NCBI GenBank assembly: GCA_044892505.1
Contig: CM097884.1
Location: forward strand, 60,140,001 to 60,204,000
Reading direction: 5' to 3'
From: Schmidtea nova
Lineage: Eukaryota
Length of the DNA: 64,000 bases
This document shows, piece after piece, positions 14,558 to 63,838 of the stretch (position 1 is its first letter; the number at the start of each line of letters is the position of its first letter). Both the position numbers and the translations under genes were made by a program. The notes below the pieces were generated by a model. That model saw only the letters and a list, made by a program, of their open reading frames with translations, did not search any database and was not told where the DNA came from.

Positions 14558-15321
14558 AACTTTTCAAAATTTATTTTACAAATTAAAATTTTATTTATTA
14601 ATTTTTAATAATAAGAGCATTTTTAAAATTTAAAAACAACTTCTAAATAAAATAAATTAAAATCATTTTGAATAAAAAGCTCTTTTTTCATAAATTTCAA
14701 AACCTATGTGGAGATCCCTTTTATAATCTTACATACAACAGTCGGTACTTCTCAAGGTGAATCTCATTAATCTCATTCATTATGCACTTATTACTCCATA
14801 CTAATATCGTCAATAATGATTCGAATGTTTTGGAAATTTCATACGGATACATATCTTGGTAGTAGTAGCAATTAATCAAGTGAGCTCCTTGATGACTGAA
14901 GTGGAGAATGGTTCCATGCGAACAGTAATTGAACATTGGTTAGTCGATCCTAAGCGAACTGGTAACTCAGTTATCAGGTGAAGGCGATAGACATTAGCAA
15001 TAGTGTTTATGTTCGACTCATTTGCCTTCTGAAGCGAAAGGGAATCAGTTTAATAATACTGAACTTGAAATGCAAATTTCGTTGTTTCGGCTACACAAGG
15101 TGGTAACACAAAAAAGCGATCAAAAGCAAAATACAAGCAAATAAGAACAATTTTGCATTTCTTGTGCCAAAAAAATTAGCAGGTACCCGAAACGTTTCAG
15201 TTGATTAATAATTTAATATTGAATTAAATTTCCGCGGTGATTTTTAAAAAACAATTTCCCTGGAGGCAGGCATGTAAATAAATATCCTATATTGATGCCG
15301 GAATTGGATTGCCATTAGCTA

Positions 15322-15749
15322 TTAAATAAAAGTACATCTCACTTTCATAATAATCTTTTCAATAATATCAAAATCGATGTTGCGTTTATAACTCAAACAA
15401 AATAAGCTCAATCCCATTTGTGGACGAATTATTTGGCCATATGCATCTTGTATAACGCAACCATTGTCTCGGTCGTATTTCTTCACTAAATATTTTGAAT
15501 TCTCAAGTAATTGCCATCCTTCACAATCTTTCCAGAGTGGATATGTACAGAAGAAATATGATTTTGTTCCAGATTTCAGTGCAGAAATGACCTTATTTGA
15601 CGCATCCTCTAACACCGCATTAATAAACGGAGGATTAATTGACCAACCCCCAGGGTAATCTGCCAAATTTATGTCGAAAAAATTTCCAAGGCTACCAAAT
15701 TGAGAATCGATTTCTGGGAATAAACTACAGAATCGGCAATTTTGTAAAG
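15322..15749 (-). CDS. PCIF1-like: 3' (catalytic) coding exon of a PCIF1/CAPAM-family adenine-N6 methyltransferase
   Basis: The frame extends upstream of the listed ORF to an AG acceptor (15750-15751): (CT) LQNCRFCSLFPEIDSQFGSLGNFFDINLADYPGGWSINPPFINAVLEDA...YFFCTYPLWKD. This matches the PCIF1 YCSAFPDTD..FGSRG...ANPPF...FIPEW motifs; NPPF at 15625-15636; TAA at 15322. Confidence 0.85.
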
Positions 15750-16783
15750 CTTAAATAATAAATCAAATAAATTTTTTTTAAAGAGGATTGATTTTAAAAA
15801 TTTTTATTTGTAATAAATTAAAATTTTCATTAATTTAGATTAGTCATGACGAGATAGTGACTTGTGTATCATTTACAGCACATTGTACTTTATTTCACAG
15901 TACTGGACAAAACTGCGGATAATCTCTTATTTTAAAAAAATAAAAGTTTTAATTAAAATATTTTCCCAAATCAATTTTAGTTACCTAATCATATACTTAA
16001 GTTTAACAAAATGTATTTTGATGATTTTCTATGTATTTCTATGCTATCAAACTATAATATGAAGACATTTTGTGAGGATGTTTAAAATATTACGTCATAA
16101 TCAGAATTGAATATTATATAATGGATATCAGAATTTTATCCACAGAAGTTTGTTTTTTATTGATATAGGGACAAATGCAATTAAAAAGTAACATAATTTT
16201 CTAATTTATATTATGTTGTATATTTTAAATAAGTAAATATTAATTATATGTTATTTTTTTGTATTTAAACAATTTTATTCTAATATCGGATAAACTGAAT
16301 ATCAAAAAATCGAGTGTTGGACACTGTATATAGAGGCTTGATAAAATGAATTCCATAATTTTAAATCGACCTGATGCCAAGAAGATATAATTAACTTAAC
16401 TCGCTGGCTTTGTAATTTGCAGCAGAATGTAAATCACCAGCACTAATTTGTGAAATTTAAGAATTTGTCTCTTGAAGAAATCAGCTAAACTTTTTTTAAA
16501 TTTATTATTTAGGTAATATTCATATCATATTAAGAAATCATAAAATCATCTAAAACTTTAAATATTATCGATATGAAATAAATTAATAAGAAAATAAGCC
16601 TTTGCTGCAAAAAACAATTTTATAATCGAAAATTTTAATAAAATTATTTTTGCATCAAAGGCTTATTTTTTTACTTATTAATTTATTTAATGCTTAATGC
16701 TGCTACCAGGGAATCACCATTTTATACTATTATCGATATAATTTGCACTTATTAAATACACTTCTTAAATTATTTTATAAATA

Positions 16784-16890
16784 CCGTATATACTCGTGTA
16801 TAAGCCGATCCGTATATAAGCCGAAGTGAGTTTTTATAGTCAATTTTTTGTCCAAAATCAAGTACCCGTATATAAGCCGAGGTAAAAAAA
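16784..16890 (+). mobile_element. Tc1/mariner-pogo-type TIR end fragment
   Basis: TA|CCGTATATACTCGTGTATAAGCCGA with internal repeats of gtatataagccga; opposite end not found. Confidence 0.55.
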
Positions 16891-17285
16891 TAGCTAAAAT
16901 CTGACGAATTATTTAAATAATCACAAAATCTTGTTTTTGACATGTGCACAATTTGAGAAATTCACAATTGAGCAACATGTTAGACAAAAAATTGTTTTTT
17001 GGGAAAATTTTTATTTCAAAGTATATGTAAATAATTCAACAATAATAATTTAATTAAATAATAATGCGATGTCAAAAATTTCAAAATAACTGAATACAGA
17101 GAAGAGAGAATATTTAATTCACAAAAATAATAATTAATATAAAATTGATTAAATAAATATTTTTAATCTTACAAGAGTGTTAAATTAAATATGATTTTTT
17201 AAATTAAAATTAATGTTTTTTTGGCTGGCAAAAAATATTGGTTAATGTTTTAATTTTTCATTCAAGTTTACACTAAGTTTGCAAT

Positions 17286-18164
17286 ATGTTCTTACAATTT
17301 TTTTATTTTACAATCGATCAGGCACTAAATGCACTAGATGCTAGGTTTGGACATCTTAGTAATCATAGTAACTATTTTCAATTTTTATACAACATATACG
17401 ATTTAAATACCATGTCCAAAGAAATGCTACTAAAACACAGTAAGAATTTAGAATCTATTTTAACTGATGGTGATTCTGTTGACATAAATGGGGTAGAACT
17501 AGCTGTGGAAATTTCAGCAGTATCTGCTCTTTTGGGCAAAAAAGAAAGTCCGAGCAATGTACTGAGCTTAATTACAAAGTTAAATTTTGCCCCAAATCTT
17601 TCTATTGCTTTAAGAATATTGCTAACGATACCCATTACTGTAGCTAGTGGCGAAAGGAGTTTCTCTAAATTAAAATTAATTAAGAACTTTTTACGTTCGA
17701 CTACTACACAGAATCGTCTTAATGGTTTGGCCATTTTGTCAATTGAGCATGAAATTGAGCATGAAATTAGTAAATTTAAAAGATGTAATAAAAAAGTTTG
17801 CAGAACTGAAAGTAAGAAAAATAAGTTATTTGTGATTTCAGCGTTAGTTGCTGTTACCTTGTTTTATTTTCAAAAGAATGGCATTTTGATTGTTTGTGCA
17901 TTAATTCAATTTAATAGCATATGAAAATGTAAAAAATTATTTGGTTTAAGTAGTGATATTTCTTAATTTCTACTGTTTTGTGCTGCTTGATAATCAATGT
18001 TATGTTATATGTTTTCTATTATTAAAATTTATATAAAATTATTTGGTTTTTATTGAAAATAAAAAATAGGTACATTTTTTTTAAAATTAAATATTAATAT
18101 ATATTCTTAAGGGGCGGCAATTTGTCTTTTTGTCCGGGCGGCGTAATCGCTAGAGCGGGCCCTG
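17286..18164 (+). mobile_element. hAT transposon 3' fragment (C-terminal dimerisation domain + right end)
   Basis: ORF 17286-17924 contains PNLSIALRILLTIPITVASGERSFSKLKLIKNFLRSTTTQNRLNGLAILSIE (hATC signature). GC-rich terminus ends ...GCGGGCCCTG at 18164. No left end. Confidence 0.85.
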
Positions 18165-18869
18165 GTGGTTATAAGGGCTGTATTCGTTCTCGAGAAAACG
18201 TAAAATTAAAATTTCGTTTAAAACTTCGAACCGAACTGTATATCATATTACAGATTCCGTAAATGGAATTCTGGCGGGTTAGTTTTTATTAAAGTTTTGA
18301 TATTAATCATTTTTTTTGAAAAAGAAAATTACCAAATTTGATATTCATGATAGTAAGGTACCAAGCTGCAGTAGAGTAAAGTTTTACATAACTATGGACT
18401 TGGTTAATCTATTATTTTAAAAAATTGTTTTAAAAGTTTTATTAAAAAATAATTCTAAAATCATTTTTAGTGACATAATTATTAGAGCTTGTCCACTTAA
18501 TCTCTAACAATCACAATTTGGCATATTATAAGGGCAATTGGCCGCCCATTTGAATGTTCGGATTAGGAATTTAGAATACTAACCAAATTCGACATTACTC
18601 TGACTCTACAACAAAATATCAATTCCAAAAACAGATATATAATTATTTTATGTGACTATGTATGTCAACAAACATCAACTGAAAGTTTCAAAGATTATAC
18701 TACTAGTAAATACATGCCATTAGTAACTGGCTGACAATCGATATCGGCTCCACAATCGATACAATCTGGGAAAATGCAATCGGTCAAGATTTAAAAATTA
18801 AGTTTAAAAAAACAAAAAAAATATTTAATATTTTTGAAATTTATCATACAATCACTTTATCAACATAAT

Positions 18870-19915
18870 TGATTATGTATTTACGTATTTAGTAACTTTT
18901 TTGGTTACATAACGCATTAAAATGTAATAATTTTCATAAAAACTGATTTTTTATAAAGAACTGGTAATTTCATATGTAAATTTTAATTCAATTCCAAAAT
19001 TTTACACGTAAAAATGGTCGCCTCTCATATTTCCCATAATAAAATTAAAAAGTTTCACATGTTAAATTAAAAGTCAAAAGTTTCGACTACCATTTCTCAA
19101 AAATAAAATCGGTAAATTCAAAGCAAAAATACTATCACAAAAACGGTAAACTCGGGTAAAGTTAAAAAAGGTTATAAAATCTTAAAATCAAGTCTCAAGC
19201 AAAAATATCAAATTCAAGTCACAATTAAAAAGTCTTTATACTCATTCTCAAAGGAAAAGCTTAAAAGCCAAGTCTTTAGCAAAAGCATAATTTTCAATTC
19301 TCGAGTAAAAAGCCTATAATTTCAAGTCTCAATTGACAAATCTAAAACATCCATCTCAATTAAAAGTGTGTTAAAACTATCGACAAAAAAGAGTAAAAAA
19401 TAATAAAAGAGAAAATATATAATCCTAAAAAAATTTATCTTACTAACATAAGTAGTTCAAATCAAAAGTTAAATTCAATTGTAAAAGATTACTAAAAAAT
19501 GTAAGTCTAAAAAATTGTCAAATGTAAAAATTTTAATTAAAATGTATCGAAAGGAAAATCGGAAATTTCAAATAAAAATATTATTTGCGTTATAAAAGTT
19601 TAACCCTTTTTACTTGAGAGTTTACTGGAAATCTGAGAGCTGACCGTTTTTATGAATTTAACGCATGAGTCTTTTTACTTGAAAATTTAACGTGTGAGTC
19701 TTAACTAGAGAATTTTACCGTGTTGTAAGTTTTTACATGAGAATTTTTAATTTACTTTTGGGAAATATGAGTCGAGGCCTTTTACGTGTAAAATTATGGA
19801 ACCAATTTTTACATAAAATGTTTTATAAAAAATTGATTATTATTGAAAAATTTTAAAATTTAATGTTACGAAATTATAATTATGATTACGTATCCAGAGA
19901 AATGATTACATGACT
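18870..19915. repeat. Foldback-like element with long imperfect inverted arms
   Basis: ~18990-19070 (ttttacacgtaaaa...tcatatttccca) is the reverse complement of ~19735-19800, with weaker similarity outward; interior has degenerate short repeats. Confidence 0.45.
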
Positions 19916-22462
19916 ANNNNNNNNNNNNNNNNNNNNNNNNNNNNNNNNNNNNNNNNNNNNNNNNNNNNNNNNNNNNNNNNNNNNNNNNNNNNNNNNNNNN
20001 NNNNNNNNNNNNNNNNNNNNNNNNNNNNNNNNNNNNNNNNNNNNNNNNNNNNNNNTTGGAAAATAGTTATGTAATGTATTTTTAAATTATATTTATATAT
20101 TGTGTAATTTTTGTAAAACACTATAAATTTTTAAGGAGTTTGCTGAGTTTTCACGGGGTTGAGGGATAAATGGCTTGAAAATCAACTGTGCACATTGCCT
20201 TCCTCTAGAAAAATAAAAGTTCACTGTAACTCTTAATAATATTTAATTCAAAATCTTTTGGAGTGGAGTAGCTAGCAAATATTAAGTTGAAAATGAATAC
20301 AATAATATTAAATCGACGAAATAAAGATACAAGATAATTAAATAATTAAAATAATCTTGACATAAATCATTTATTTTTGAAAAAGAAAATCTGACGGACA
20401 CGATAGCAACTTATCAAGCTGACAATTAAATTTCTGGGAGTTCATTTATAAGCTCTTGCTAGTTTTCCAAGAAAAAAATACTCCTTAACTATTTTTGAAA
20501 ATACTAATTATAATTTGTGCCATAATTCTATTATTAATCAAACCATAGATCCTAGCACTAAAAGACAAGTTAGCTAAAATTCTTTTTCATTTGATCGAAT
20601 ATTGTTAATATAATTAAATACAAATTTCTCTTCCCCTAATTATCCGAATGTAATACATTCTGTGTTCCAGTAGATTACTGAAAATAAAGTTAATTTTACT
20701 CCAAAATATCATGATGTATTTACTCACATTCAACCAAGATAATTTAGTTAGAATACGATTCACGGTAACAATTAACAACTTAAACAATTGTAATTTTTAA
20801 TTATCGCTCGATTAAAATGATACAAACTTTTTTAATATATGTGACAATAAAAGAATAAGAAATTCAGTAAATGTATAAATTTACCGTAAATTATACTTTC
20901 ATTGGAAAATATAAAATTTTAAGAAATTATAATATTTTATGTCGTAATGTTTTAATTATGTTCATTGTTAAAAAAGATACCATAAGGTAACAATGCGAGG
21001 ATACTATTAAAAGCGATGGATCTGAGAAATCTACAATAAATGCAACAACTTGAAACGATGTAGCTATAATAAATGTTAATATTAATATGAATTTTATCAA
21101 TGGGGATTAAAAAACAAAAATGTAATAGAAAATATTAACAAGGAAACTTTTCAATCCATCTTACCAAAGTTTATTATAAAAAAATAAAGATATCAAAATA
21201 AAATTTAATTAATAAAAAATTTAATTTCCGAGAATTTTTAAACTAATAGTTTTACAGACCAGTAGTAAATAATCATTTTGAGAAAGTCATACATTTAATT
21301 GAACCCAGAAATTTTAATTCTTGGCGTATTTGTTATTAGACAAAATTACAATTCAAACAAATACCAATTTCTCTAACATTTCCCGCTAGTTTATGAAAAA
21401 ACAAATATTTTAGTTTCCTTGAAAAAAACTTAATGAAATATCACAAGAATTTATTGTAATATGTTGGTAAATTTTAATTTTATATGCGAGGTATTAAAAT
21501 ATTTAATAAATATAGCATTAATTTCATACAATCAAACGTAAATATTTATTATTATAACAATTAGCGGTTATCGTGTTCAACTCATGTTTTCATATCAAAT
21601 AAATAAAAATAAGTCACAAAAATTTATTCTATAAAAACTTGTAAAAATAAATTTTGGTCTTATTTTATTTTTCTTGAGACATTTCTAAAAATAATTCAAA
21701 GAGCAATTTGATATTAAAATTTCATACTCGTTATTATTTTATAAGACTTCCAATGCTATATTTCCATTTTAAAATTAAATATACCATTCAGTTAATTGGT
21801 TTTTCACATTAAAATGCTTTTTAAAACAAATTTTGAACTCTTAAATAAATTCTTGAATTTCNNNNNNNNNNNNNNNNNNNNNNNNNNNNNNNNNNNNNNN
21901 NNNNNNNNNNNNNNNNNNNNNNNNNNNNNNNNNNNNNNNNNNNNNNNNNNNNNNNNNNNNNNNNNNNNNNNNNNNNNNNNNNNNNNNNNNNNNNNNNNNN
22001 NNNNNNNNNNNATCTTTTCTTTAATTCAATAATTTTCATATTAATTTTTGAAAGACAAAAATTTTGTTTTTCTTGATAGGTACACGATATTTCGGCGTGC
22101 CTTAAAAAATTAGATCTAAAGTCTTACAAAAATTAACGAAAGTTTTAATAGTTTTTTTTAAAATTAATTCACGCAGAAATCATTAATAATTATTTACCAA
22201 TCTGTGTTTAATCAAATTCAGATTTGTTTATATATAATATAAAATATTTGAAATTAGTTAATTGGCTGATATGTTGTAAAATAAACTGTAAAATAAAAAA
22301 ACCAAACTTTAATTAATTAAATAAAATTAAGATTCTAATAAAATTAAAAAAAATTTAAATTAATAAAATTTAAAAAAATTAATAAAATTAAAAATAAAAT
22401 TAATAAAATTAAATAAAAAATAAAATTAATAAAATAATAATAATTAATAATAATAATAATAA

Positions 22463-22938
22463 AAAATAATTAAAACCAAACGCCAATCCAAATATATATT
22501 TTGCACAATATATTTCGAAAACTTAATTCTCTTCATCAGGTGCTACCCAATCTTACATCCAAATATAAATCAAATAAATCGATTTTCGTCAAACGAATTA
22601 GTATTAATTTTTAAAATAAAATATATTTTTTAAATTCCATATTATAGTTAAAAAATTTAAATCGATTAAAATTTTTTTTTAATTTAAATAAATTAATCTT
22701 AAAAATATAATATTCTTTTATTTTTATACAAAAAAATATTTTTTTAAGAATATATTATAAATATTTCCATATTTATAAACAACGGAATGATTGAAAACGA
22801 AATTCATAATCATCAATTGAAAATGCTCTAAAACTCCATATTTATAAAGATTGGGTAGCACCTGATGAAGAGAATTAAGTTCTCGAAATATATTGTGCAA
22901 AATATATATTTGGATTGGCGTTTGGTTTTAATTATTTT
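22463..22938. repeat. 92-bp inverted repeat pair (22463-22554 / 22847-22938), foldback MITE-like
   Basis: aaaataattaaaaccaaacgccaatcc...tgctacccaatctt and its reverse complement, one mismatch seen; ~290-bp AT-rich spacer. Confidence 0.8.
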
Positions 22939-24151
22939 AGTGCCATGCTTGTTGTGTTATATATTAATAATAATTAATAAAAAATATAAAATTAAAAAGA
23001 TTCTAATAAAATTAAGATTCTAAATAAAATTAATTAAGTTTGGTTTATTTATTTTACACCACAAAATACAGAATATTATCTTTTTGCACATAGGTGATCA
23101 TTAACATATCATTATTAAGAGGAATTATTTTAATATTCGCTTATATATTATTGATTTAAATTAAAGTAGTGTCCGCATTTGATAGGAATGCTTCAATTAA
23201 TATGACTTATCAAATAGATTGTTTTTGCCGTATTATTTGTTTATCGTTGATTTAATATAGAATAAAAATTAATGACTTTATTTCATCGTTTCTACAGTAG
23301 TTTACACGGCACTTAACCAATTCTTGATGGTTAAATAGTTGCCGACTTATTTCCTAACCTTGAGAACGAGGATTGGTACATAATTTAAAAATATAAAGGA
23401 ATACAAAAAAACTAGTTGTATATTTTTTCTCTGCTTTTTCGGAAGCTTGGTATTAAATCTCTCTTTAAATTTAGTTATATTTTTAGATTCGATGATTATT
23501 GCCCACACGAAAAATGCCCACACGAAAAATGCCCACACGAAAATTGCCCACAAGGAAAAATGCCCACATAGACAAATGCCCACATAGAAAAATGCCCACA
23601 CGAAAAATTATTTTAAATATAAAAATTAAATTAAAATAAATAGAGAAAAAATCAAAAATTATATTCTATCTAGGAGATAATCTATTAGTGATTTAAAATA
23701 AAATATTAAAATGTATCAACAATAAATTTACAAATTTTACAATTTAAAATCATTTTTATATTTAAAATACTTAAGATCGCTTTGCTACTATACGATACAA
23801 TACATCAGTGTTCTTCCACCTGTGTTCCGCGGAATCCTTGGGTTCAAAATTCATTGTTATTGTGTTTGTAAATAACAATGAATATTGTTTTACTAAAGAG
23901 GTAAACATTTTATTACAGAATAATAAGATAATAATTCTAGGAATATCTAAAATAATCAAATGTTACTGAGTAATTGTGGGTTTTTTTTTAAAAAAATTAA
24001 AAAGAAACAATCTGATTGTGGGCAGGATTAATGGAGGTAAAAAATTAAAAAACAAAAATAGTGAAAAGGAGATAAAAAAATTGTTTAAAAAAAATAAAAA
24101 TTTTAATTCATTATATTCTACTTCTACTTAATACAAATATACATTTTAAAT

Positions 24152-25493
24152 TTATTGTAAATTAGCCAACTTTCTTAAGTATACAATTTTATCTTCTGTT
24201 GTACTATATTGTTGCACAATAGTAGATACCGAATCAGCTAATTTTTGGTATTTCCTATTTTTAATTTAAGGACGACCCGTTTCTGCGTTAGCTAGTGTCA
24301 ATCTATGGCAAGCTATATCTCGCTGCAATCCATCAAATAGAAACCAAATGCTGGGATGACTACAGTGGAATAAAGAATTCAATGCATTATGAAATCCCTG
24401 ACAGCAATTCGTTGTTTTCGGTGATTTCTCCAAAGCTGAATCATAATGATTCCACAATTCAATAGAGAACAGCGGATTTCTACCAGCTGCACCCTCAATA
24501 TATGTGCCAAAAAATATGTCAGTATTTCACTATAATTCTCTTCTTCCGGATAAGTTGCTGCAAGCTTAGTAAATACTGATCTAACATCAGATGGAGGCAC
24601 AAATGACAATGCTGCTAATGATTTCAGCTTTAGTTTCATATCCAGGTTGTTTTCAAAAGTAGTTTTTAGACCAACAGAACTAATTTTTCTTGTTATACTT
24701 TGGGCCAAATGAAAATAACAGCCTCTCATATCAGTCTGTGGAAATGCAATTCTGGCTGCATTCATCGCTGCTTTCTCAAAATCTAGTAATATTCTTTCAG
24801 GTGCCAAATTTGGTAGCAAGTTCTTAAATATTTCAAACATTTTTTTGTATGTATCTCCGTTTTTTTTAACAAAAAATAAATACAAGGTGGATAAGAATTA
24901 CCAACCTGAGCATGCCAAGTATAAAGTTGATAAAACATGCTTGGAACTTTATCAAAAGTTCCATCTCCGAATATTGTATCTTTATTTAATTCTTTTAAGA
25001 GATAAATATCTCCTAAAACCAGAATTCTGTCTGGATCACTTGCACCTGAATCATGAAGCACTAGCTCGGTGTATTTATCTGGAATTTCAAAATTTGTATC
25101 TTTAGGTACTGGTAAATGTCCATCTCTTCTAAAATTCAGTAGACTTCGTGATATTGAAGTTTTTTTCGGCATAAACGCTAGTGCTTCACTGCTCACTTCT
25201 AATAAAATACTCCCCATTACATTTCTAGGAGTAGCACCAATTGATGTCATCGCATCCTGCATTTTTTTCTTTGCTAAATTGCATTCTATTTTTTGTGGGC
25301 ATGATTCATGGCAATGTTGCGTTGGTTGATTTACAATATTGCCATCTTTAGTTTTTATGATGGAATGACAGTTTATAATGCGATGTTGCCTGCATCTCCA
25401 AGTCAAAACTCCATTTGTTGTACGGAAATAGATATACTCAAACCCAGAGTAAATTAAAACTTGATTGCCTCTCTGCGTACTAGAATATTCCAT
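24152..25493 (-). pseudogene. FLYWCH + MULE transposase, disrupted
   Basis: N-terminal FLYWCH-like ..GFEY...TWRC...C....H.H; DGTF..P...QLYT; GCYFHLAQS; TTNCCQGFHN (Q at the expected catalytic E). One-base frameshifts at homopolymers ~24860-24867 and ~24509-24514; premature TAA 24266-24268; terminal TAA 24152. Confidence 0.85.
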
Positions 25494-25709
25494 TCTCAGA
25501 CCTTTTAAAATATTTTAAAAAATATCGTTAGAAAATTATGGTATCAAAAGTATTATATTAACAAAAGAGAATTTAAATATTACATACCTTATAATTGTTT
25601 TTTTATATATTCACAAATTTTCAATATATGTATTTCCCTAGATAAAATATAATTTTTGATTTTTTCTCTATTTATTTTAATTTAATTTTTATATTTAAAA
25701 TAATTTTTC

Positions 25710-26295
25710 GTGTGGGCATTTTTCTATGTGGGCATTTTTCCTTGTGGGCATTTTTCTATGTGGGCATTTGTCTATGTGGGCATTTTTCCTTGTGGGCATT
25801 ATTCTGTGTGGGCATTATTCTGTGTGGGCATTTTTCCTTGTGGGCATTATTCTATGTGGGCATTTTTCCTTGTGGGCATTTTTCTATGTGGGCATTTGTC
25901 TATGTGGGCATTTTTCCTTGTGGGCATTATTCTGTGTGGGCATTTTTCCTTGTGGGCATTTTTCTATGTGGGCATTTTTCTATGTGGGCATTTGTCTATG
26001 TGGGCATTTTTCCTTGTGGGCATTATTCTGTGTGGGCATTTTTTCTTGTGGGCATTATTCTGTGTGGGCATTTTTCCTTGTGGGCATTTTTCTATGTGGG
26101 CATTTTTCCTTGTGGGCATTTTTCTATGTGGGCATTTTTCCTTGTGGGCATTATTCTGTGTGGGCATTTTCCTTGTGGGCATTATTCTGTGTGGGCATTA
26201 TTCTGTGTGGGCATTAATCGTGTGCGCAATACTATATTGTGGGCAATTTTCTGTGGGTAATTTTCGTGTGGGCATTTTTTGTGTGGGCAATAATC
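25710..26295 (+). repeat. Minisatellite array (~38-40 units of TGTGGGCATT.TT...) forming the right TIR; 7 units in the left TIR (23494-23610)
   Basis: Directly visible tandem repeat; it explains the repetitive ORFs listed in several frames. Confidence 0.95.
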
Positions 26296-26680
26296 CGATC
26301 ACGATATTTTTAAGCTCAGGGATGTTGAGAATAAAGATATCCCTAAAAATAGTAACTGATGTCTGTACTTTTAAAAATAGAAATTTGTTGATCAAAAACA
26401 AATAATGTTGACAAATGATACGCTTTGCCACTCAGAATGAAGAGCAACAAAAATAGTATTTTAACAAACATTTTCCTCATAAAATCTTCGCTTAAGAAGA
26501 ATTTTTTAGTTGTTATCGACTATTGAAAATTAAATTCAAGCATACAATATATTGAGGTCAGAAACGCATTCGAGAACACACACACTCACTATTATATTAT
26601 ATAATCTTTGTTCATATTGTTCATATTCATTACTCTGAATATGGCAACTTTCAAAGAATATTTGGTGATATGTGGATGTT

Positions 26681-26822
26681 CATTGACCTATAGGGCCTCT
26701 CATTTCGTACCCAGTCGATCCAGGGATTTACAATTGCATCCAGGGTGTCAATGTAGGAAGGCCTTGCGGAATGAAATGAATAAACCTCATGTGTCATTCA
26801 TTGCTGTCGACACCAAAAGCCA
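26681..26822 (+). repeat. 142-bp block duplicated at 37374-37515
   Basis: cattgacctatagggcctctcatttcgtacc...caccaaaagcca, first ~80 bp identical in both copies; the minus-strand frame is open in both (MTHEV...IDTLDAIVNPWIDWVRNERPYRSM). Confidence 0.85.
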
Positions 26823-27259
26823 AAATGTTCGCACTGGTCAATATATTAGGAAAACAAATTTATTTTAAAAATTGTAAAAATTATAAATAAAACGTTTCTA
26901 ATAACATTTTAAAAGGAAAGTCAGCTGGGCGATGAATCAGGATTTGAAACATCAATAATCAATTAATTTAATGTTGTTCAAGGTAGTTGGACGCGTTCCG
27001 TCAATACAAATCCACCGTGTTGCGTAATTATACGCCGAATGATGCAATAGTCGACATACAAGTCTTTCCTCTTCCGCAGTAATTGACCCTTAGCTTGGCT
27101 TGATCATATAAGCAACGGAACAATGGGAATCAGTGGGAGAGTGATTTAATTTATACTTTATTTCATTGGCAACGTCTTATATATTAGCTGTTGTTCGCAG
27201 TCAGTGTAGATACTTTTTCATTTTTTTAAACATTTTTATAAAAAACAATTAATTCTTAC

Positions 27260-27866
27260 TCAAAAACCGAGAATTAATCGGTGAAGCAAATCCCTCATAT
27301 CGCACATTATAATGCCTGTAATACGCTAGATGTAACTCCATCGGATCGCCCCATTGATAACTGCCGTTTCCGAGAGATTCATAGCGCAACAACATTCTCG
27401 TTACATCATCCAACGGATAATGCATAATTAAATAAGATAGATTGTCAAATTTCTTAGATGAAAATTCTCCATAACGAATGATATTATTGTTTCCTCCTGG
27501 CTGTATATCGGAAAAGTTTAATGCGGAATATATTTGATGAGACTCATTAATAAATTCAAGAAGTTTCTTTACGGCTTCTTTTGATTTTAAAATATTCTTT
27601 CTCCAAAAAAATTTTTTCTCTATGATTGCATTCAATAATATATTGGCTATTCTGTGTCCTAAGTTGATTTTCGATAGAAGAGGAAATGTGGCATATTTTG
27701 GAAGGGATTTATCTTCATTAATTACCAGCAGCCAGTGCTGAATGACATTTGTTCCTTCTTGTTTCTGTCTGGAATTTTCCAACATACAAATTTTATGGAA
27801 ATATGTGTAAAGTTCTTGAGTAATAAACACCCATTGTTTATATTCGATTTGAATTGAAGTATCCAT
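27260..27866 (-). CDS. PCIF1-like: 5' coding exon, copy A, of the PCIF1/CAPAM-like methyltransferase (202 codons + 1 nt)
   Basis: ...MLLRYESLGNGSYQWGDP...YNVRYEGFASPINSRFL matches PCIF1 LLRRY...LQ..LP...FGV.FECFASPLN. Ends TTG A|GTAAG (donor 27259-27258), phase 1, compatible with exon 15749. Confidence 0.8.
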
Positions 27867-27890
27867 AAATTCACTATCTCAAATAAATTA

Positions 27891-27942
27891 CTAAAATTAT
27901 TTTTTGAAAAAAGTATAATAATAAAAATTTTAGAAAACTTAC
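27891..27942 (-). other. 5'-UTR spliceosomal intron (52 nt) of PCIF1-like copy A; 51-nt equivalent at 43473-43523
   Basis: GTAAGT...TTTTAG (copy A) and GTAAGT...TTTCAG (copy B); in-frame stops between acceptor and ATG show it is untranslated. Confidence 0.65.
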
Positions 27943-28495
27943 ATTTTCACGAAGATATCAAGAATTAAAAGTAAAATTCTAACAGTATCTTTAATAATGA
28001 AATGAAAATTAAATTTATGTATTGCGAGCTCAGTTATTTAAACAATTATTAGCTCATTTAAATATTGTAACCGAAAGATGATTTATTTAAATAATGAATA
28101 ATTTAAAGATGATAATAATGAATAATTTAAATATTTTAAGATAAAAACTTTAAAAATAATGAAGTCATTGATATTACAATGTTGAATTTTACTAAAATTT
28201 GTGTAGAAAAAAAATTTATAAATCTAAAGATATTTTAATATTAACAATAATTTCAATTATAAGTAGGTCGACTATCAATTAATTTGTTTATTGTTAGGCA
28301 AAAACTAGATTTTGTTTAAATAGCGTGGTAATACAGAATGTAGAGAGCGAGCGCAAACTAAATCTAAAACATGATCAAGAGAAACACTTAGTAACAACAA
28401 AGTAATAACAATACACATAAATAATTGATTAAAACAAGTTTAAAAATTAAACTAAACAAAACGCATCAAATATACACGTGAAAAACACATAACAT

Positions 28496-31400
28496 AGTTA
28501 TATAAATTGTTGTTTTAGTTATCGAAAAAAATAGTGTGTTTAATAATAAATAATTTATCTTGTCTATTTGTTTTTTCAATGAATTTAGAAGGAGACTTAA
28601 CTGGCTAACCACACCAAGAAATCAATACCGTCATTAGACGGCAGACGACTAAAAGTAGGTTGGAGTCCTTATAGAAGCAGGCTTGAGAGATATTAAATTT
28701 TAACGTGAGGAAGTTCGATGGAAAAGTTGGTTGTGAGGCCAAATTATGGCAAAAAGATATTTTAGAATAGTTGAGGATAAAAGACCAAAGTTTAGTCAAT
28801 ACGTTTGATCTCTTACTGACAGAGGCAGCAGCTCTATTATTGGAGTAGCCAAAGGAGAGAAAATGACAGATCTAATAGCGAAAGAATGGTTCATTGAAAC
28901 GTTTACAGTAAAGAAAACGATTACGAACAAGATCGTGGAACTTGCCCAATTACATCAAGAAGGCGATGAGAGATTTAAGAATGAGAACGTTAGTAAAGAG
29001 CGTATTCAGATCGGAAATGTTGGATGAACAAATTGACGGGGATATAATTTTAAACAGAGCAAAAGACGAACGGGTAAGAGATATTTATGCTAGTTAAATT
29101 AACTAGTGTTAAAGAAGCAAGGGATATGGCGAAAATTCAAGAAAAATTGAAATGACAAATGGAAATAATTCTAATATGTGCACTATACGAAGAGAATCCT
29201 ACGCATCTATTGCAAATAAAAGTAAATTTACCAGACGTCCTCAAAAGAGCATGACAGAGAAACCGAGATAGATTCACAAAGAACGACGAGAACTAAGTTA
29301 TGGATCAGCAAGATCCAAAAAATAATCAATACCTATGGATAATAGAGGAGGAAAAACTGAGAACAAACGGTAAAGGTTTTCAGAAAAAAAGGAAGATTCC
29401 AACAGTATCACTGAAAGATATCGCCAGAAGAATATTTAACGACAGTAGGTCGAGAACGACACCAACACCAGAGAAATTAGCTCTTGGTCAATGTTTCTGC
29501 TGTGGAGAAAAAGGTTATCGACGTTTTGAATGTCCAATGAAAGATCAATGTCTCATTTGTAGCAAGGAAGGCCATCGATTTAGAGACTGTAATTTACTGA
29601 ATAATAGAAACAATTACAAGAAAAAGATAGCATGTATATATGAAGGAAATCGTTGAAATAACAACAACGAAGACACCGAGGATGCCTATAGCAATTTGGA
29701 TGAAATGATACAAAAGTCAATGGACAAAGCAAAAACAGAGACGTTCCCCTTGCTTTCATTTCGTCAGTGGTATCAGCACAATAGAGAAGAGAGAGAATCG
29801 AAATGGAGTCAAGAAACTGAAGATGTACGAGACGGATGATTGAAGAAAGTGGAGTAAGATTATTTTGAATGGGACAGAAATAGATAAGCTGTGGGACTCG
29901 GGAGCATCAGTGTCAGTGATGAGCAAGAGGAGTTGGAAAAATGGGAAAACCAAAGCTGACAGTAAGTAATATTTCATTATGTGGAGTATTTTTATCAAGT
30001 TCGGAAAGACCACTAGGAGAAATGACGATATAAAGAGATTATAATGGCAAGAGGAGAAAAATAAGTGTGATTGTAGTTACAGACATACGGCCAAATTTTA
30101 TTGGCGGTGTAGACACGATGGAAAAGTTTGGAATTCAGCTGGTAAATAAATAAAATCGAAGCATCACTAGTAGGGAAGACATATCAGAATTCACGAGAAA
30201 TGCAAGCACTGGAGATGTTGATGAGTTGTAAAGACGAAGATTTTAAAAGAATTATACGAAAATTCAGAGAAATTTGTATGACATCAACTTTTGACTTGGG
30301 ATTCACTGAAAGGGTAAAATATGAGATGTATATAACAGGAGATTCAGTAAGAATACAGCCCAGAAGACAACCAATGCACCTGGAACAAAAACTAGACGAG
30401 TTAATCATCAAATCACTGGTAGCAAAGGTCATCAATAAATGTAAAAGTGTATGGAACGCCCCGCTGGTGATAATCGCAAAGACAATTCAATTACAATGTG
30501 TGTAAATTACAGAGGATTGAACGCCATTACAAAAAGTGTCGTTTCCAATGCCAGATACCCGATTCCTTTTGGACTGCTTGGTAGATTTGAAGTATTTTAC
30601 TTCCATTGATCTAGAACATGCCTACTACCAGGTCGGGATGGCAGAATAAATACAAGACGTCACAGATTTTAGTACAGGGCAAGAACAGTTTTGCTTCAAC
30701 AGGTTACCTTTTGGACATGCAACAGCCCAGCAACATTCCAGAGGAGGATGCACTCAATGCTGGAAGGAATATTGTTTAAATGAGTGTTGGTTTACTTAGA
30801 CGATATATTGATTTATGGGAGACAGAAAAGAACATAATTTATGGCAATAGGAAGTATTCAAAAGGATACAAATAGCAGGGTTGAAGATTAATCCTGGTAA
30901 ATGCGAGCTATTGAAATTAGAACTGACATTTCTGGGACACACTGTTAGTTCCAAGGGGATAAAGACGAATGACAAGAAGATCAAAAAAATTTAAGGAGGC
31001 AGAGATACCGACATGTGCTAAACAATTAGGGTCGTTTCTGTGCATGACTAATTACTACAGGAAGTTCATAAAAGATTACACAAAGATTTCTGGGCCGTTA
31101 TACGCAGCCATTTCCGAATGCGAGAAAATGATTAATTGGTCAGAAGATTACAAAAGTTTTGAATTGCTTTAAACAATATTTTGTGAAGCCCCAATCCTGA
31201 ATATTCCAAGAGTAGAGGACAAATTTATTCTGGATACATATGCCAGTTTTGAAACGATCAGAGCTATTCTGTGTCAAAAGAGAGGAGACAAAACATAACT
31301 AGTTATTGCGAATGAATCAATACATTTAACGGCAAACGAAAAATGGTATTGTGTGACAAGGAATGAATTACTTGCAATACACAAATATGTTTTATATTTC

Positions 31401-33749: not shown

Positions 33750-35560
33750 TAAATTTTAGTCATTAATATTTGATTTGCCAACCTTTCAGGCGTTTTCGTT
33801 TCAAAATGCTCGATTCTTCTTTATTTACCATTTAAAACGTCTATCGAGCGAATTATCATTGCTGAAATCATGCCATACTTCGTTGATCTTTTTGAGTTCT
33901 AAGCTATGTTTCGATGGTAGTACTTTGAGGGTTTCTTCCTGTTTGTTTTTAATCTGCTCTGTTTCGACTAATTCGCCGAATTCGAGTTTGTTGATGATGT
34001 CTGTTTCTATCCTTGATAGTGTGTCTGCTGCTATGTTTGCTGCTCCTGCGATATAAATGATTGTACAATTGAACTGTGAGATGAAGTTTGATTGCCTATT
34101 ATTTGTCTTGGGGTGGGTTTTTCATTTGTATTGCATTAATGAGTGGTTTATGGTCTGTAAGGATCTTGAAGTTTCGTGCTTCCACCAAGTGTTAGAAGTG
34201 TTTTATGGCATGGTGGATTGCGAGGAGTTCTCGGTCGAAGGTTAAGTACCTTATTTTGTGTGCTTTGAGTTTTTTTTTGAAAAGAACTAATCGGTTGTTT
34301 GTCGTGTTCGTTTTCTTAATATAAAGTCGATCCCATTGCGAATCCAGTAGTGTTACTTGGGACATGGTAACTTTAGCTTTCTCAAAGTTTTTTTTTATTT
34401 TTCGGTCCAGTCAACTTTCACGTTTGTTTTCGTTTTGATAAGGTCATTTAGAGGGGCTAAAAGTTCATTGCAGTTAGAAATGTATGCGTGGTAAAAGTTT
34501 ACCATTCCCATAACTCGTCTGAGTTCTCTGTTTGTGTTTGTAGTTTGAACTGTTGGATTGTGTTTATTTTCTATTGGTTTTGTACTTATTTCGTTTATGG
34601 TGTGTCCAAGGAAATTTATTTCTTTTTTTTGAAATTCACGTTTTTGAATGTTGGTTTTAAGGTTTGCGGAGACCAGTGTCTGAAACACCTTGTCGATATC
34701 GTTAAAATGTGTTTCTTTGTCCAGACTTGCTATTAGAATGTCTTCCAGGTATGCGATTGTGTTTTGGTTGTTTTTCAAGGTTTTATCCATGAATCGTTGG
34801 AACGTCGCAGCTGTGTTTCGTAAACCGAATGGCATTCTGTTCTATTCGAACATGCCAATTGGTGTTACGATTGCAGTCTTTTTAATGTCCTCTTTCCTGA
34901 TCGGGACTTGATAGTAGGAGTTCAGTATGTCTATTTTGGAGAAGAACTTTGCTCCTTTTAATCTGTTTATTATATCCCTTATAATTGGCAGGGGGTAGTT
35001 GTTTGGCTCTGTGAACTAGTTTAACATTCTGTAATCACCACAAGCTGTTCATTCACCGTTTGTCTTTTTCTTGAGCATTAGGAGTGTACTTGGATTGTAC
35101 TGGATTCCCATTTGTAATAATTCAGTTAGGTTTTTTGATTCTTCGTCGAATTTTACTGGTTCGATGAGTTTGTCGTATTTCTTGAATAAAGCTATTATCT
35201 CAGGGCCGTGTTTTGGTGTTTTACTTGGTTTGTTTTTTTTACATCAGCCTGTATTAAGCCAAAGTATACTTTTGACTTAGACAGTGTTGTGGCTTTGTCA
35301 AATTTTCTGCTTGACGCTAGATTTTCGAAGTGTTTAGTTTTGACAGTCAACTACTAAATTGTAGTGTGCTAAAAAGTCAGCGCCGATAATAGACTGCTGT
35401 ACTTACGCTATTATAAACGTCCAAGTGTATTTTTTTGAATTTATTGTGATGGTTAGAATACAATCGCCGTATGTTTTGATATTGGTGACGTTAGCTGCTG
35501 TTAGAGATTTATCTGTGATTTGGGGTTTCTTCGCGAGTAGCATTGTAATATTGAGAATAT
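33750..35560 (-). pseudogene. Internally deleted Gypsy pol remnant (protease-RT-integrase tail)
   Basis: 34395-34835 reads MPFGLRNTAATFQRFMD...AYLEDILIAS (RT); protease-like and integrase-like fragments flank it. LTRs not delimited. Confidence 0.8.
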
Positions 35561-42841: not shown

Positions 42842-43448
42842 TCAAAAACCGAGAATTAATCGGTGAAGCAAATCCCTCATATCGCACATTATAGTGCCTG
42901 TAATACGCTAGATGTAACTCCATCGGATCGCCCCATTGATAACTGCCGTTTCCGAGAGATTCATAGCGCAACAACATTCTCGTTACATCATCCAACGGAT
43001 AATGCTTTAATAAATAAGATAGATTGTCAAATTTCTTAGATGAAAATTCTCCATAACGAATGATATTATTGTTTATTCTTGGCTGTAAATCGGAAAAGTT
43101 TATTGCGGAATATCTTTGATGAGACTCATTAATAAATTCAAGAAGTTTCTTTACGGCTTCTATTGATTTTAAATCTTTGTTTTTCCCAAAAAAATATTTC
43201 TCCTTGATTGCATTCAACAATATATCGGCTATTTCATGCCCGAAGTTGATTTTCGATAGCAGAGGAAATGTGGCATATTTTGGAAGGGATTTATCTTCAT
43301 TAATTACCAACAGCCAGAGCTGAATGACATTTGTTCCTTCCTGTTTCTGTCTGGAATTTTCCAACATACAAATTCTATGGAAATATGAGTAAAGTTCTTG
43401 AGTAATAAATAGCCATTGTTTATATTCGATTTGAATTGAAGTATCCAT
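42842..43448 (-). CDS. PCIF1-like: 5' coding exon, copy B, of the PCIF1/CAPAM-like methyltransferase
   Basis: Same length, same GTAAG donor (42841-42840) and phase as copy A; 22 amino-acid differences by manual alignment; no stops or indels. Confidence 0.78.
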
Positions 43449-43919
43449 AAATTCACTATCTCAAATAAATTACTGAAATTATTTTTTGAAAAAAGTATAA
43501 TAATATAACTTTAGAAAACTTACAGTTTCACGAAGATTTTTAGAATTTAAAGTAAATTCTAGCAGTATCTTTAATTATGAAATGAAAGTTATATTTATGT
43601 ATTGCGAGCTCAGTTATTTAAAAAATTATTAGCTCATTTAAATATTGTAACCGAAAGATGATTTATTTAAATAATGAATAATTTAAATATTTTAAGATAA
43701 AAACTTTAAAAATAATGGAATCATTGATATTACAATGTTGAATTTTACTATTATTTGCATAGAAAAAAATATTTATAAATCTAAAGATATTTTAATATTA
43801 ACAATAATTTTAATTATAAGTAAGTTGACTATCAATTAATTTGTTTATTGTTAGACTAAAAGTAGATTTTATTTGAATAACGCGTATTACAGCACGTAGA
43901 GAGTGCTCACGAAGTAAAC

Positions 43920-55646: not shown

Positions 55647-56270
55647 ATGGAGTTGCAAAATGATGCTGTTTACCAAATTGTGGGACCTAGTGGTAGTGGT
55701 AAAACGCTTTTTGTATGTAAACTGTTGCAATCAAATTTATTTGTTGAAAAATTCAATCAAATATATTGGCATCAAGGTTCCGAATCTGAAAATGGTTTGA
55801 CACAAACAGAATTTTGTAAAGTCAAAATGAAAATAATCAAGGGTTTTGATAAAGATTGGACAAAGAGATTAAAAAAGAGAGACGTTATCATAATTGATGA
55901 TTTGTTTCAAGAAGCCAACAAAGAAAAAGAATTTAATAATTTATTTACAAAGATTTCTAGACATGTTGGAGTTACAGTTATATTCATAACACAGAATCTT
56001 TTCCAACAAGGTGGAAATCATAGAACACGTAATTTGAATGTACATTATCTGGTTATTTTTAAAAATCCAAGAGATGCAACAGTTATAGATTTTCTTGCAA
56101 GACAAGCATATCCAAACAATAGAAAATTTCTACTTGAAGCATTTCAAGATGCTACCAAAGTTCCTCATGGATATTTATTTCTAAACTTTACTCAGAAATG
56201 TCCAGATGATTTACGAGTCAGAACTGATATATTTAACAAGAATGGTGCGACTATATATAAACAAAGCTGA
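55647..56270 (+). CDS. A32-like/FtsK-HerA DNA packaging ATPase
   Basis: Walker A GPSGSGKT, Walker B VIIIDDL, SRH arginine finger, IFITQN. Confidence 0.92.
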   Translation: MELQNDAVYQIVGPSGSGKTLFVCKLLQSNLFVEKFNQIYWHQGSESENGLTQTEFCKVKMKIIKGFDKDWTKRLKKRDVIIIDDLFQEANKEKEFNNLFTKISRHVGVTVIFITQNLFQQGGNHRTRNLNVHYLVIFKNPRDATVIDFLARQAYPNNRKFLLEAFQDATKVPHGYLFLNFTQKCPDDLRVRTDIFNKNGATIYKQS

Positions 56271-56287
56271 ATAAAAAAAAATGAATT

Positions 56288-56818: not shown

Positions 56819-56879
56819 ACAATGGGTGCTAGTCCTTCATTACCTAATTTCAAGGTTGATTTTAAATCAAATTGTTGCA

Positions 56880-58924: not shown

Positions 58925-59306
58925 TCCTGATATTGTTTCGCTTTATAATGGTAGTCAATCAGGTGGTGAATTACCATATTTTGTTGGTAAACAATATGGT
59001 TCTGGATGGTTGCGCACAATAGGTAGATATGCACTTCCAATTCTTAAAAAGATTGGTTCTTTTGGAATGAAAACAGCAAGTGATGTGTTAGTGAAAAATC
59101 AGAAAATTTTACCAACTTTAAAAAGACATGCAATGGAGGAAATTGGTAAAATAATGCCTAGTGCAAAAAAGATTTTCAAACCAAGTGAACCGGAAAAACC
59201 TACACCAAAACCAGTTGTTCCTCGTAGTAAACGAAAAAAGTTTCTTATAAACAAAAGATGGAAAGGTCGTGGAACAATATTTGAAAATGATTTGCGGCAA
59301 AACTGA
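58917..59306 (+). CDS. Small basic Polinton protein with QxGG/QxGxG motifs (core-like)
   Basis: SQSGGELPYFVGKQYGSGWLRTIGRYALPILKKIG; overlaps both neighbours. Confidence 0.7.
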   Translation: MSNPDIVSLYNGSQSGGELPYFVGKQYGSGWLRTIGRYALPILKKIGSFGMKTASDVLVKNQKILPTLKRHAMEEIGKIMPSAKKIFKPSEPEKPTPKPVVPRSKRKKFLINKRWKGRGTIFENDLRQN

Positions 59307-63821: not shown

Positions 63822-63838
63822 AATTCATTTTTTTTTAT

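What the first reader, a model, noticed from the sequence alone, without database searches (positions are those of the whole stretch)
15322..27866. Hidden split gene: an intact PCIF1/CAPAM-family m6A methyltransferase across an 11.5-kb TE-filled intron
Seen: the 205-aa ORF at 27249-27866 stops right after the FASPIN motif, but TTG A|GTAAG there is a phase-1 splice donor. The ORF at 15322-15666 extends upstream to an AG acceptor beginning CT, which completes that codon (A+CT = Thr). The join gives a 344-aa protein: ...YEGFASPINSRFL-T-LQNCRFCSLFPEIDSQFGSLGNFF...GGWSINPPF...TYPLW. Established: this reproduces, in order, the PCIF1 motifs ECFASPLN, YCSAFPDTD, FGSRG, NPPF (catalytic) and PEW. Inference: this is the one clearly intact non-viral gene in the window. 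The intron (15750-27259) holds hAT, foldback and Phantom elements and crosses two N-gaps.
Basis: partly seen in the sequence, partly recalled or inferred. Interest (0 to 1): 0.82.

Follow-up and report, generated by a model that had tools for sequence, protein, structure and literature searches.

The report
Spliced minimal cap-methyltransferase gene in planarian
Two distant reading frames are joined in RNA across an 11.5-kb transposon-filled intron into an intact 344-residue, WW-less relative of the mRNA cap methyltransferase PCIF1/CAPAM, a real but fairly ordinary gene whose nearest relatives are, unexpectedly, giant-virus proteins.

Summary
On the minus strand, a coding exon (27877-27260, ATG at 27866) ends at a phase-1 GT donor. 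A second exon (15749-15322) starts after an AG acceptor. The join gives an open 344-aa frame.

- **Pfam:** the two halves hit PCIF1_WW at adjoining profile positions (23-76 and 78-163).
- **Homologues:** full-length relatives of 343-485 aa, including Macrostomum lignano genes, run through the junction without a gap.
- **RNA:** one RNA-like public run has a contig that joins base 27260 directly to 15749 (30 of 30 letters). So the splice is real whatever lies in the two intronic N-gaps.
- **Fold:** a model of the closest homologue superposes on human CAPAM with Z 27.6 over 309 residues.

- No family member has a WW domain. The nearest relatives are short PCIF1-like proteins of giant viruses, so calling the gene "non-viral" is questionable.
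- The "first" exon begins at an AG acceptor.
- That exon has a 93%-identical twin at 43459-42842. A second RNA junction joins a donor end to the acceptor at 27877, which could mean twin-to-exon splicing or a back-splice.

The scan also noted a similar split paralogue about 6 kb beyond this window (s1-428721). I file the gene as a new member of a known family, of moderate interest.

The parts
27260..27877 (-). Coding exon '1A'. AG acceptor at 27879-27878, ATG at 27866-27864, 202 codons plus 1 nt, GT donor at 27259-27258 (phase 1). Encodes the N-terminal helical region and the FASPIN half of the methyltransferase core.
   Evidence: Sequence. RNA-like run X5 covers only 27260-27877 of the 3.5 kb laid. 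Pfam profile positions 23-76.
15750..27259 (-). Intron of 11,510 nt as assembled (GT...AG), including two N-gaps (19917-20055, 21862-22011). It holds a hAT fragment, a MULE/FLYWCH foldback element and a small foldback.
   Evidence: No X5 contig was laid on 26885-27235.
15322..15749 (-). Coding exon 2. Encodes FCSLFPEID, FGSLG, NPPF (catalytic) and PLW. Stop TAA at 15324-15322.
   Evidence: Pfam 62.8 bits, profile positions 78-163. Aligned to zebrafish CAPAM residues 350-418. The X5 loose end at 27260 equals 15720-15749 exactly.
15187..15321 (-). Probable 3' UTR, with an ATTAAA signal at 15217-15212.
   Evidence: Inference only. X5 record 19 has 563 letters beyond the junction, which equals 428 nt of exon 2 plus 135 nt. 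ATTAAA was found.
42842..43459 (-). Twin exon '1B'. Open 202-codon frame with the same acceptor and donor, 36 nt and 22 aa differences from 1A. It lies in a 1.5-kb duplicated block (42437-43903 versus 26855-28347). No second copy of exon 2 is in the window.
23500..26289 (-). Intronic MULE transposase plus FLYWCH zinc-finger ORFs, flanked by inverted arrays of 15/16-nt tandem repeats (foldback or Phantom-like element).
17286..17924 (+). Intronic ORF with a hAT C-terminal dimerisation domain (a transposase fragment).
   Evidence: PF05699, E 1.1e-12.

Best explanation
This is a real, expressed, spliced planarian gene on the minus strand. A coding exon (27877-27260) is spliced from its GT donor to the AG acceptor before 15749, removing an 11.5-kb intron bloated by DNA transposons. 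The mRNA encodes a 344-aa 'minimal CAPAM': the helical plus Rossmann core of the cap-specific adenosine N6-methyltransferase PCIF1/CAPAM, without the WW domain that tethers canonical PCIF1 to RNA polymerase II. Inferred function: it binds SAM through the FASPIN/FPEID/FGSLG region and uses the NPPF loop to methylate N6 of an adenosine in RNA. The most likely target is the cap-adjacent nucleotide (m6Am), reached without Pol II CTD recruitment. The gene belongs to a flatworm clade, present also in Macrostomum, that sits among giant-virus homologues. It is part of a local cluster: a twin exon lies 15 kb upstream and, by an earlier scan note, a paralogue lies beyond the window.
For: Shown here:
- Frame, splice sites and join.
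- The two exons match adjoining halves of PF12237.
- The join is 60% identical to P0001 over 336 aa, with no gap at the junction. P0003, P0004 and Macrostomum P0005/7/8 run straight through the same point.
- RNA-like run X5 covers only the exon. It lacks the flanking repeats that the DNA-like runs hold at depths in the thousands. One of its contigs continues from 27260 into the exact first 30 nt of exon 2, a string unique in the window.
- All 18 near-invariant family positions are kept.
- The P0001 model has pLDDT 93.4. Its six best PDB matches are all CAPAM, with E about 1e-12. VIA gives Z 27.6, rmsd 3.3 A over 309 residues, model 11-343 against human 197-665; the next family scores Z 10.4.
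- No WW domain in any of 51 family members.
- Macrostomum P0005 is an intron-bearing gene beside Mito_carr and Ras genes.

Inferred: the substrate and the biological role.
Against: The splice rests on one run of one study whose library type is not on record; I call it RNA only from its coverage pattern. Because these are contigs, neither transcript ends nor expression levels are known. The 30-mers at the junction are identical in exons 1A and 1B (52 nt identical from the donor), so the junction contig itself cannot say which twin feeds exon 2. What supports 1A is that 1A-specific contigs stop exactly at 27260. The structure was predicted for a 60%-identical homologue, not for the window protein. 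dN/dS between the twin exons is 0.74, from 9 synonymous and 27 non-synonymous changes, so the N-terminal region of at least one copy is under weak constraint. No enzymatic evidence exists for any WW-less member.
Confidence: 0.82

Rival explanations
1. The 344-aa product is not the main or only product. The locus may be a tandem-exon unit in which the upstream twin exon 1B (43459-42842) is spliced to exon 1A's acceptor (27877) and/or directly to exon 2. That would give a 550-aa in-frame protein with a doubled N-terminal half, or an alternative 344-aa isoform. Alternatively, exon 1A forms a 618-nt circular RNA by back-splicing.
For: X5 record 20 joins the last 30 nt of a donor end (27289-27260, identical in 1A and 1B) to 27877 and continues through 1A-specific sequence. 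Exon 1A is 618 nt (3 x 206), and the 1B-1A-2 frame is open for 550 codons. Both twins keep the ORF, acceptor and donor. X5 contigs break at 27579 and 27679, where 1A and 1B diverge, as expected if both are present in the RNA.
Against: The junction 30-mers cannot tell 1B-to-1A splicing from a back-splice of 1A. A doubled half-domain would be structurally odd. Contig depth cannot rank isoforms, and no read tool calls were left to lay reads on 1B.
Confidence: 0.4
2. The gene is a decaying relic, either an endogenised giant-virus gene or a TE-disrupted gene. Its transcription and splicing would then be incidental and the protein would have no function.
For: The closest relatives are viral. The window is otherwise transposons and a Polinton-like element. 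The huge TE-filled intron splits the catalytic domain. dN/dS between the twin exons is 0.74.
Against: The frame is open, all 18 near-invariant residues including NPPF are kept, and the splice is precise. Orthologue-like genes are kept in flatworm lineages as distant as Macrostomum, with their own introns and host-gene neighbours. Identity to P0001 is highest over the catalytic half: 72% for exon 2 against 53% for exon 1.
Confidence: 0.1
3. It is the PCIF1-derived methyltransferase domain of a DIRS1-type retrotransposon, or cargo of another mobile element, and not a cellular gene.
For: Iyer et al. place DIRS1 polyprotein MTase domains in the PCIF1 clade (PMC4738411). The Atlas structure search lists RVT_1 proteins at TM 0.40-0.45. 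Exon 1 lies in a 1.5-kb repeated block.
Against: No RT, RNase H or recombinase adjoins the gene in frame; the only RT fragment (34395-34835) is 6.5 kb away. DIRS1 copies are described as catalytically degenerate, whereas this protein keeps every conserved residue. All close relatives are free-standing proteins of 300-490 aa.
Confidence: 0.03
4. It is a scaffolding artefact: the two exons belong to different loci, or the twin exon is a mis-assembled allele, and the junction contig comes from elsewhere.
For: Two N-gaps lie in the intron and two more lie between 1B and 1A. Only one study holds the sequence.
Against: 1A-specific RNA contigs end exactly at the predicted donor, and the continuation equals the window's own exon 2 start. 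Both exons are on the same strand in the right order.
Confidence: 0.04

Closest known systems
Human and zebrafish PCIF1/CAPAM, the cap-specific adenosine N6-methyltransferase (PDB 6IRV, 6IRW, 6IRX, 6IRY, 6IRZ, 6IS0)
   Same: Same Pfam family, PF12237. Same motif order: FASPxN, FPD(T/I)D, FGSxG, NPPF, PxW. The whole 343-aa homologue model superposes on the CAPAM helical plus MTase core, residues 197-665 (Z 27.6, rmsd 3.3 A, 309 residues).
   Different: No WW domain. About half the length (344 aa; the canonical clusters are 714-719 aa), so CAPAM's insertions and termini are missing. About 20% identity in the structural alignment. phmmer reaches only E 1e-8 over about 110 residues. Cap-binding residues were not checked.
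Short PCIF1_WW-annotated proteins of Nucleocytoviricota (Cafeteria roenbergensis virus E3T4I2, Tetraselmis virus 1, Hokovirus HKV1, Pithovirus-like LCPAC MAGs, Bodo saltans virus, Salmon gill poxvirus, GVMAG contigs)
   Same: Free-standing, WW-less, mostly 300-450 aa, same fold (BFVD E 1e-14 to 5e-10). They are the nearest clusters in the ESM Atlas: feature score 0.97, against 0.82 for canonical PCIF1. 28 IMG/VR loci carry relatives. The flatworm clade falls in a supported group (SH-aLRT 95) with IMG/VR sequences.
   Different: The viral genes are intronless and sit in compact viral genomes. The window gene is spliced, sits in host chromatin among transposons, and has flatworm orthologues beside host genes. 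Identity to the P0001 query is about 27-42%.
Macrostomum lignano hypothetical proteins BOX15_Mlig008908g1 and Mlig021227g1 (P0005, P0007, P0008)
   Same: Same clade (SH-aLRT 99). 43-45% identity to P0001. Collinear through the junction region. Intron-bearing host genes.
   Different: Their introns lie at other positions (about aa 104 and 267 of P0005), and none lies at the planarian site. Their N-termini are longer.
MTase domain of DIRS1-type retrotransposon polyproteins (PCIF1 clade of Iyer et al. 2016, PMC4738411)
   Same: A WW-less PCIF1-derived domain found in repeat-rich animal genomes.
   Different: That domain is embedded in an RT/RNase H polyprotein and described as catalytically degenerate. 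This one is free-standing and keeps all conserved residues.

Membership tests
PCIF1/CAPAM family (Pfam PF12237) | Domain match above Pfam's gathering score | tested here: met
   Exon 2 alone scores 62.8 bits against a cut-off of 31.1 (E 4e-17). Exon 1 adds profile positions 23-76, adjoining exon 2's 78-163. P0001 full length scores 89.7 bits.
PCIF1/CAPAM family (Pfam PF12237) | Catalytic NPPF motif and the SAM-side motifs FASPxN, FPDxD, FGSxG | tested here: met
   SINPPF, EGFASPIN, FPEID and FGSLG are all present. All 18 near-invariant family columns are kept. Zebrafish CAPAM itself has FPDID.
PCIF1/CAPAM family (Pfam PF12237) | CAPAM fold: helical domain plus Rossmann MTase domain | tested here: met
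   Tested by proxy on the 60%-identical homologue P0001: pLDDT 93.4, Foldseek top six all CAPAM, VIA Z 27.6 over 309 residues. The window protein itself was not folded.
Canonical PCIF1 orthologue (Pol II-coupled CAPAM) | N-terminal WW domain that binds the Ser5-phosphorylated Pol II CTD | tested here: not met
   No PF00397 hit in the window pieces or in any of the 51 family members. The protein starts only about 10 residues before the region that aligns with CAPAM residue 197.
Canonical PCIF1 orthologue (Pol II-coupled CAPAM) | m7G-cap-dependent N6-methylation of cap-adjacent Am | not testable with these tools
   Needs a biochemical assay. Cap-contacting residues were not compared.
Giant-virus-type minimal PCIF1-like subfamily | Free-standing, WW-less, about 300-450 aa, closer to NCLDV members than to canonical PCIF1 | tested here: met
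   Atlas features 0.97 (NCLDV clusters) against 0.82 (canonical). E 1e-35 to 1e-25 to metagenomic and viral members against 1e-8 to CAPAM. BFVD hits.
Giant-virus-type minimal PCIF1-like subfamily | Descent from a viral gene (flatworm clade nested inside the viral radiation on a rooted tree) | tested here: inconclusive
   The flatworm clade is monophyletic (99) and lies inside a 95-supported group with IMG/VR sequences. The tree has no canonical PCIF1 outgroup and is only midpoint-rooted.
DIRS1 retrotransposon MTase domain | Embedded in an RT/RNase H/tyrosine-recombinase polyprotein, with degenerate catalytic residues | tested here: not met
   No adjoining RT or recombinase. Catalytic residues are intact. 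Family definition from PMC4738411.

The most novel reading that the evidence does not exclude
Flatworms carry a giant-virus-type minimal cap adenosine methyltransferase, captured once before Macrostomorpha and Tricladida diverged. It has since gained introns and expanded into a tandem cluster in planarians. Duplicated N-terminal exons, each with its own acceptor and donor, would then be combined or alternated (1B-2, 1A-2, 1B-1A-2, or a circular exon) to vary the helical, RNA-binding half of the enzyme while sharing one catalytic exon.
Probability: 0.3. Interest if true: 0.65.

Novelty: new member of a known kind. Interest (0 to 1): 0.4.

Why it matters
The finding shows that a gene invisible to ORF-based reading can be recovered from splice logic alone, and that it is in fact expressed. 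Biologically it adds a WW-less, half-size CAPAM to an animal lineage. Since canonical PCIF1 works through its link to Pol II, a free-standing version raises the question of which RNAs it marks in planarians. It also offers a small, tractable enzyme shared with many giant viruses, whose cap-adjacent methylation I found almost unmentioned in the paper library searched. If the viral ancestry and the twin-exon usage hold, the locus would be a compact example of virus-to-animal gene capture followed by exon-level diversification. As it stands, it is a well-supported but ordinary gene annotation.

Tried and rejected
- **Word-index protein searches.** Exon 1 found no protein of this species, neither the 205-aa ORF nor the 344-aa join, only homologues. 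So the spliced form could not be confirmed from assembled proteins. A third search, with the core of P0004, brought no canonical PCIF1 for rooting.
- **Encoding contigs.** P0001 has no contig on record, so no nucleotide dN/dS against an orthologue was possible.
- **Sequencing runs.** No run on record as RNA holds either exon. The RNA-like nature of X5 had to be inferred from coverage.
- **Conserved intron start.** Rfam and tRNA scans of 26700-28400 and 14000-44500 found nothing above threshold.
- **Literature.** PCIF1 with planarian or Schmidtea found nothing relevant. PCIF1 with giant viruses found only a one-line Kaumoebavirus mention.
- **Joined protein.** Its pieces and the homologue P0001 were used instead.
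- **Rejected readings.** The DIRS1 and assembly-artefact readings were considered and rejected; see the rival explanations.


Full report
**Observation.** The window is AT-rich. Earlier notes of this scan on the same genome describe it as a planarian. The first ORF's frame reaches ...FASPINSRFL and then meets TTG A|GTAAGA, with the GT at 27259-27258. Upstream of the second ORF the same frame stays open to TTATTTAAG|CT at 15750/15749. Joining 27866..27260 to 15749..15322 gives 1035 nt, a 344-aa frame with only the terminal stop, and the junction codon A+CT codes for Thr. Five N-runs are in the window. Two of them (19917-20055, 21862-22011) lie inside the proposed intron and none touches coding sequence. 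No frame therefore depends on the gaps. Only the intron's length (11,510 nt as assembled) and its internal order do.

**Is the join real?** Three independent lines say yes.

1. Pfam PCIF1_WW matches exon 1 at profile positions 23-76 and exon 2 at 78-163 (62.8 bits, E 4e-17). These are the two adjoining halves of one domain.
2. Full-length homologues exist, and they run through the junction without a gap. P0001 is 343 aa and 60% identical over 336 aa. P0003, P0004 and three Macrostomum lignano proteins do the same.
3. Public contigs were laid on 26300-29800.
   - Three runs (X1, X3, X6) cover everything, with depths in the thousands on flanking repeats, so they look like DNA.
   - Run X5 covers only 27260-27877, so it looks like RNA.
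   - X5's contig ends at 27260 and continues with 30 letters that are the exact reverse complement of 15749-15720, a string found once in the window.
   - That contig has 563 letters beyond the junction. This fits 428 nt of exon 2 plus about 135 nt of 3' UTR, ending about 25 nt after an ATTAAA at 15217 (inference).
   - No X5 contig lies on the intron next to the donor, so the proximal acceptor and the read-through 205-aa product find no support. The tool warns, however, that a hole in contig coverage proves nothing.

**Limits of the RNA evidence.** It is one run, from one study, with a library type not on record, and it is contigs and not reads.

**What the protein is.** Exon 2 aligns to zebrafish CAPAM residues 350-418 across FCSxFPDID, FGSxG, NPPF and PEW. 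P0001 aligns to human PCIF1 residues 323-427. All 18 positions that are at least 90% conserved in a 51-member family alignment are kept in the window's pieces.

An AlphaFold model of P0001 was used because the joined window protein has no reference. It has mean pLDDT 93.4. Its six best PDB matches are the six CAPAM entries (E 8e-13 to 3e-11), followed by type I restriction-modification methylases at about 2e-3. VIA-align gives Z 27.6, rmsd 3.3 A, 309 residues, model 11-343 against human 197-665; the next family scores Z 10.4. So the entire short protein, N-terminal helices included, corresponds to the CAPAM helical plus MTase core.

No member of the family has a WW domain. The protein is therefore a member of the PCIF1/CAPAM family by sequence, motifs and fold. 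It fails the one feature that defines the canonical Pol II-coupled enzyme. I infer a SAM-dependent RNA adenosine N6-methyltransferase, most likely acting at the cap-adjacent nucleotide and working without CTD recruitment. This was not tested.

**Relatives and ancestry.** The nearest ESM-Atlas clusters are 342-433-aa PCIF1_WW proteins that are mostly Nucleocytoviricota (feature score 0.97). Canonical WW-bearing PCIF1 scores 0.82. IMG/VR holds 28 loci with relatives on contigs up to 394 kb, several of them named GVMAG. Two metagenomic homologues sit in compact, intron-free contexts with Evr1/Alr, metacaspase, restriction-modification and asparagine synthase genes, which are typical giant-virus neighbourhoods. 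BFVD lists Cafeteria roenbergensis virus, Tetraselmis virus 1, Hokovirus, Bodo saltans virus, Pithovirus-like MAGs and Salmon gill poxvirus.

In a 68-row tree, seven sequences form one clade (SH-aLRT 99): the window protein, P0001, P0003/4 and the Macrostomum proteins. This clade lies inside a 95-supported group that also holds IMG/VR sequences. I could not obtain canonical PCIF1 sequences. The tree is therefore only midpoint-rooted, and viral ancestry remains a lead, not a result. Only the Macrostomum rows carry an organism name. I call P0001, P0003 and P0004 'flatworm' by their placement alone.

Macrostomum P0005 is a three-exon gene next to mitochondrial-carrier and Ras genes. Its introns lie at other positions than the planarian one. 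These are therefore long-resident host genes and not a recent viral insertion. The literature library holds no paper on PCIF1 in planarians. For giant viruses it holds only a remark that Kaumoebavirus LCC10 has a PCIF1_WW protein with 'no homologue in other viruses', which contradict. Iyer et al. place DIRS1 retrotransposon MTase domains in the PCIF1 clade. That reading does not fit here, because the protein is free-standing, catalytically intact and has no adjoining RT.

**Complications in gene structure.** X5 coverage starts exactly at 27877, right after TTTATTTGAG (AG at 27879-27878), 11 nt before the ATG. The coding exon is therefore entered by splicing.

A 1.5-kb block (26855-28347) is repeated at 42437-43903 at 93% identity. 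The repeat contains an open twin exon (43459-42842) with the same acceptor, ATG and donor. No second exon 2 is present in the window.

The twins differ at 36 nt and 22 aa, all but one of the nt differences within the first 450 nt of the coding sequence (dN/dS 0.74). The last 52 nt of the exon are identical, and the first roughly 400 nt of the intron are nearly so. That gradient suggests gene conversion or relaxed or diversifying change in the N-terminal helices.

A second X5 contig joins a donor end (27289-27260) to 27877 and continues in 1A-specific sequence. Because the donor 30-mer is shared by the twins, this junction has two readings. It is either 1B spliced to 1A, in which case the 1B-1A-2 frame is open for 550 codons, or a back-splice giving a 618-nt circle. 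I could not lay more reads to decide.

A conserved GTAAGT at 27942-27937, 65 nt upstream of the acceptor, could end a short leader exon in both copies. This is speculation.

My data neither prove nor exclude that. Another note (s1-428721) reports a similar split PCIF1-like paralogue about 6 kb beyond the window's end, so this is a gene cluster (not checked by me).

**The intron.** It holds a hAT dimerisation-domain ORF (17286-17924). It also holds MULE and FLYWCH ORFs (24379-25493) flanked by inverted arrays of 15/16-nt repeats (23500-23674 and 25637-26289). A 92-nt-armed foldback lies at 22463-22938.

**Verdict.** The gene is a new member of a known family, in a WW-less subfamily that databases already label automatically but that I found undescribed in the papers searched. 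Interest is moderate. The more novel readings, viral capture and twin-exon isoforms or a circular exon, are open and testable.

Noticed in passing
window 42437-43903 versus 26855-28347: A 1.5-kb duplicated block carries an intact twin of the coding exon (43459-42842). Identity is uneven: about 93% upstream, about 92% in the first 450 nt of the exon, and about 99% from the last 160 nt of the exon through 400 nt of intron. No second copy of exon 2 is in the window.
   Followed up: partly
window 27260 joined to 27877 (run X5, record 20): An RNA-like contig joins a donor end to the exon's own acceptor. It is either exon 1B spliced to exon 1A, which stays in frame, or a 618-nt circular RNA. The shared 30-mer cannot tell which.
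   Followed up: partly
window 27937-27942 and 43519-43524: A conserved GTAAGT lies 65 nt upstream of the acceptor in both copies. It is a candidate donor of a short leader exon. No RNA contig was laid there.
   Followed up: no
window 23500-26289: MULE transposase and FLYWCH ORFs sit between inverted arrays of 15/16-nt tandem repeats. The right-hand array (25703-26289) holds 37 copies. This is a foldback-type MULE (Phantom-like).
   Followed up: partly
window 55647-64000: Mirror-image ORF sets lie around about 60,090. They include an A32-like packaging ATPase (55647-56270) and an rve integrase with a chromodomain (56826-57902). This is a Polinton/Maverick-like element in palindromic arrangement, or an assembly foldback.
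   Followed up: partly
window 34395-34835 and 44349-44780: A reverse-transcriptase fragment and a zinc-knuckle (gag-like) ORF lie between and beside the twin exons. They are retroelement debris.
   Followed up: no
window 26892-27214: DNA-like runs carry a contig that skips 321 nt of the conserved intron start. The anchor on the shorter side is only 20 nt. It may be another copy or allele, or a spurious repeat join.
   Followed up: no
L011 and L006 (IMGVR_UViG_3300017991_000053): One 164-kb giant-virus contig carries two PCIF1-like genes. Several viral homologues are fused into ORFs of 800-1300 aa, and some have NPPY or other variants in place of NPPF.
   Followed up: no
PMC7909422 (Kaumoebavirus LCC10): The paper states that its PCIF1_WW protein has no homologue in other viruses. 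BFVD and IMG/VR searches here show many giant-virus homologues.
   Followed up: partly
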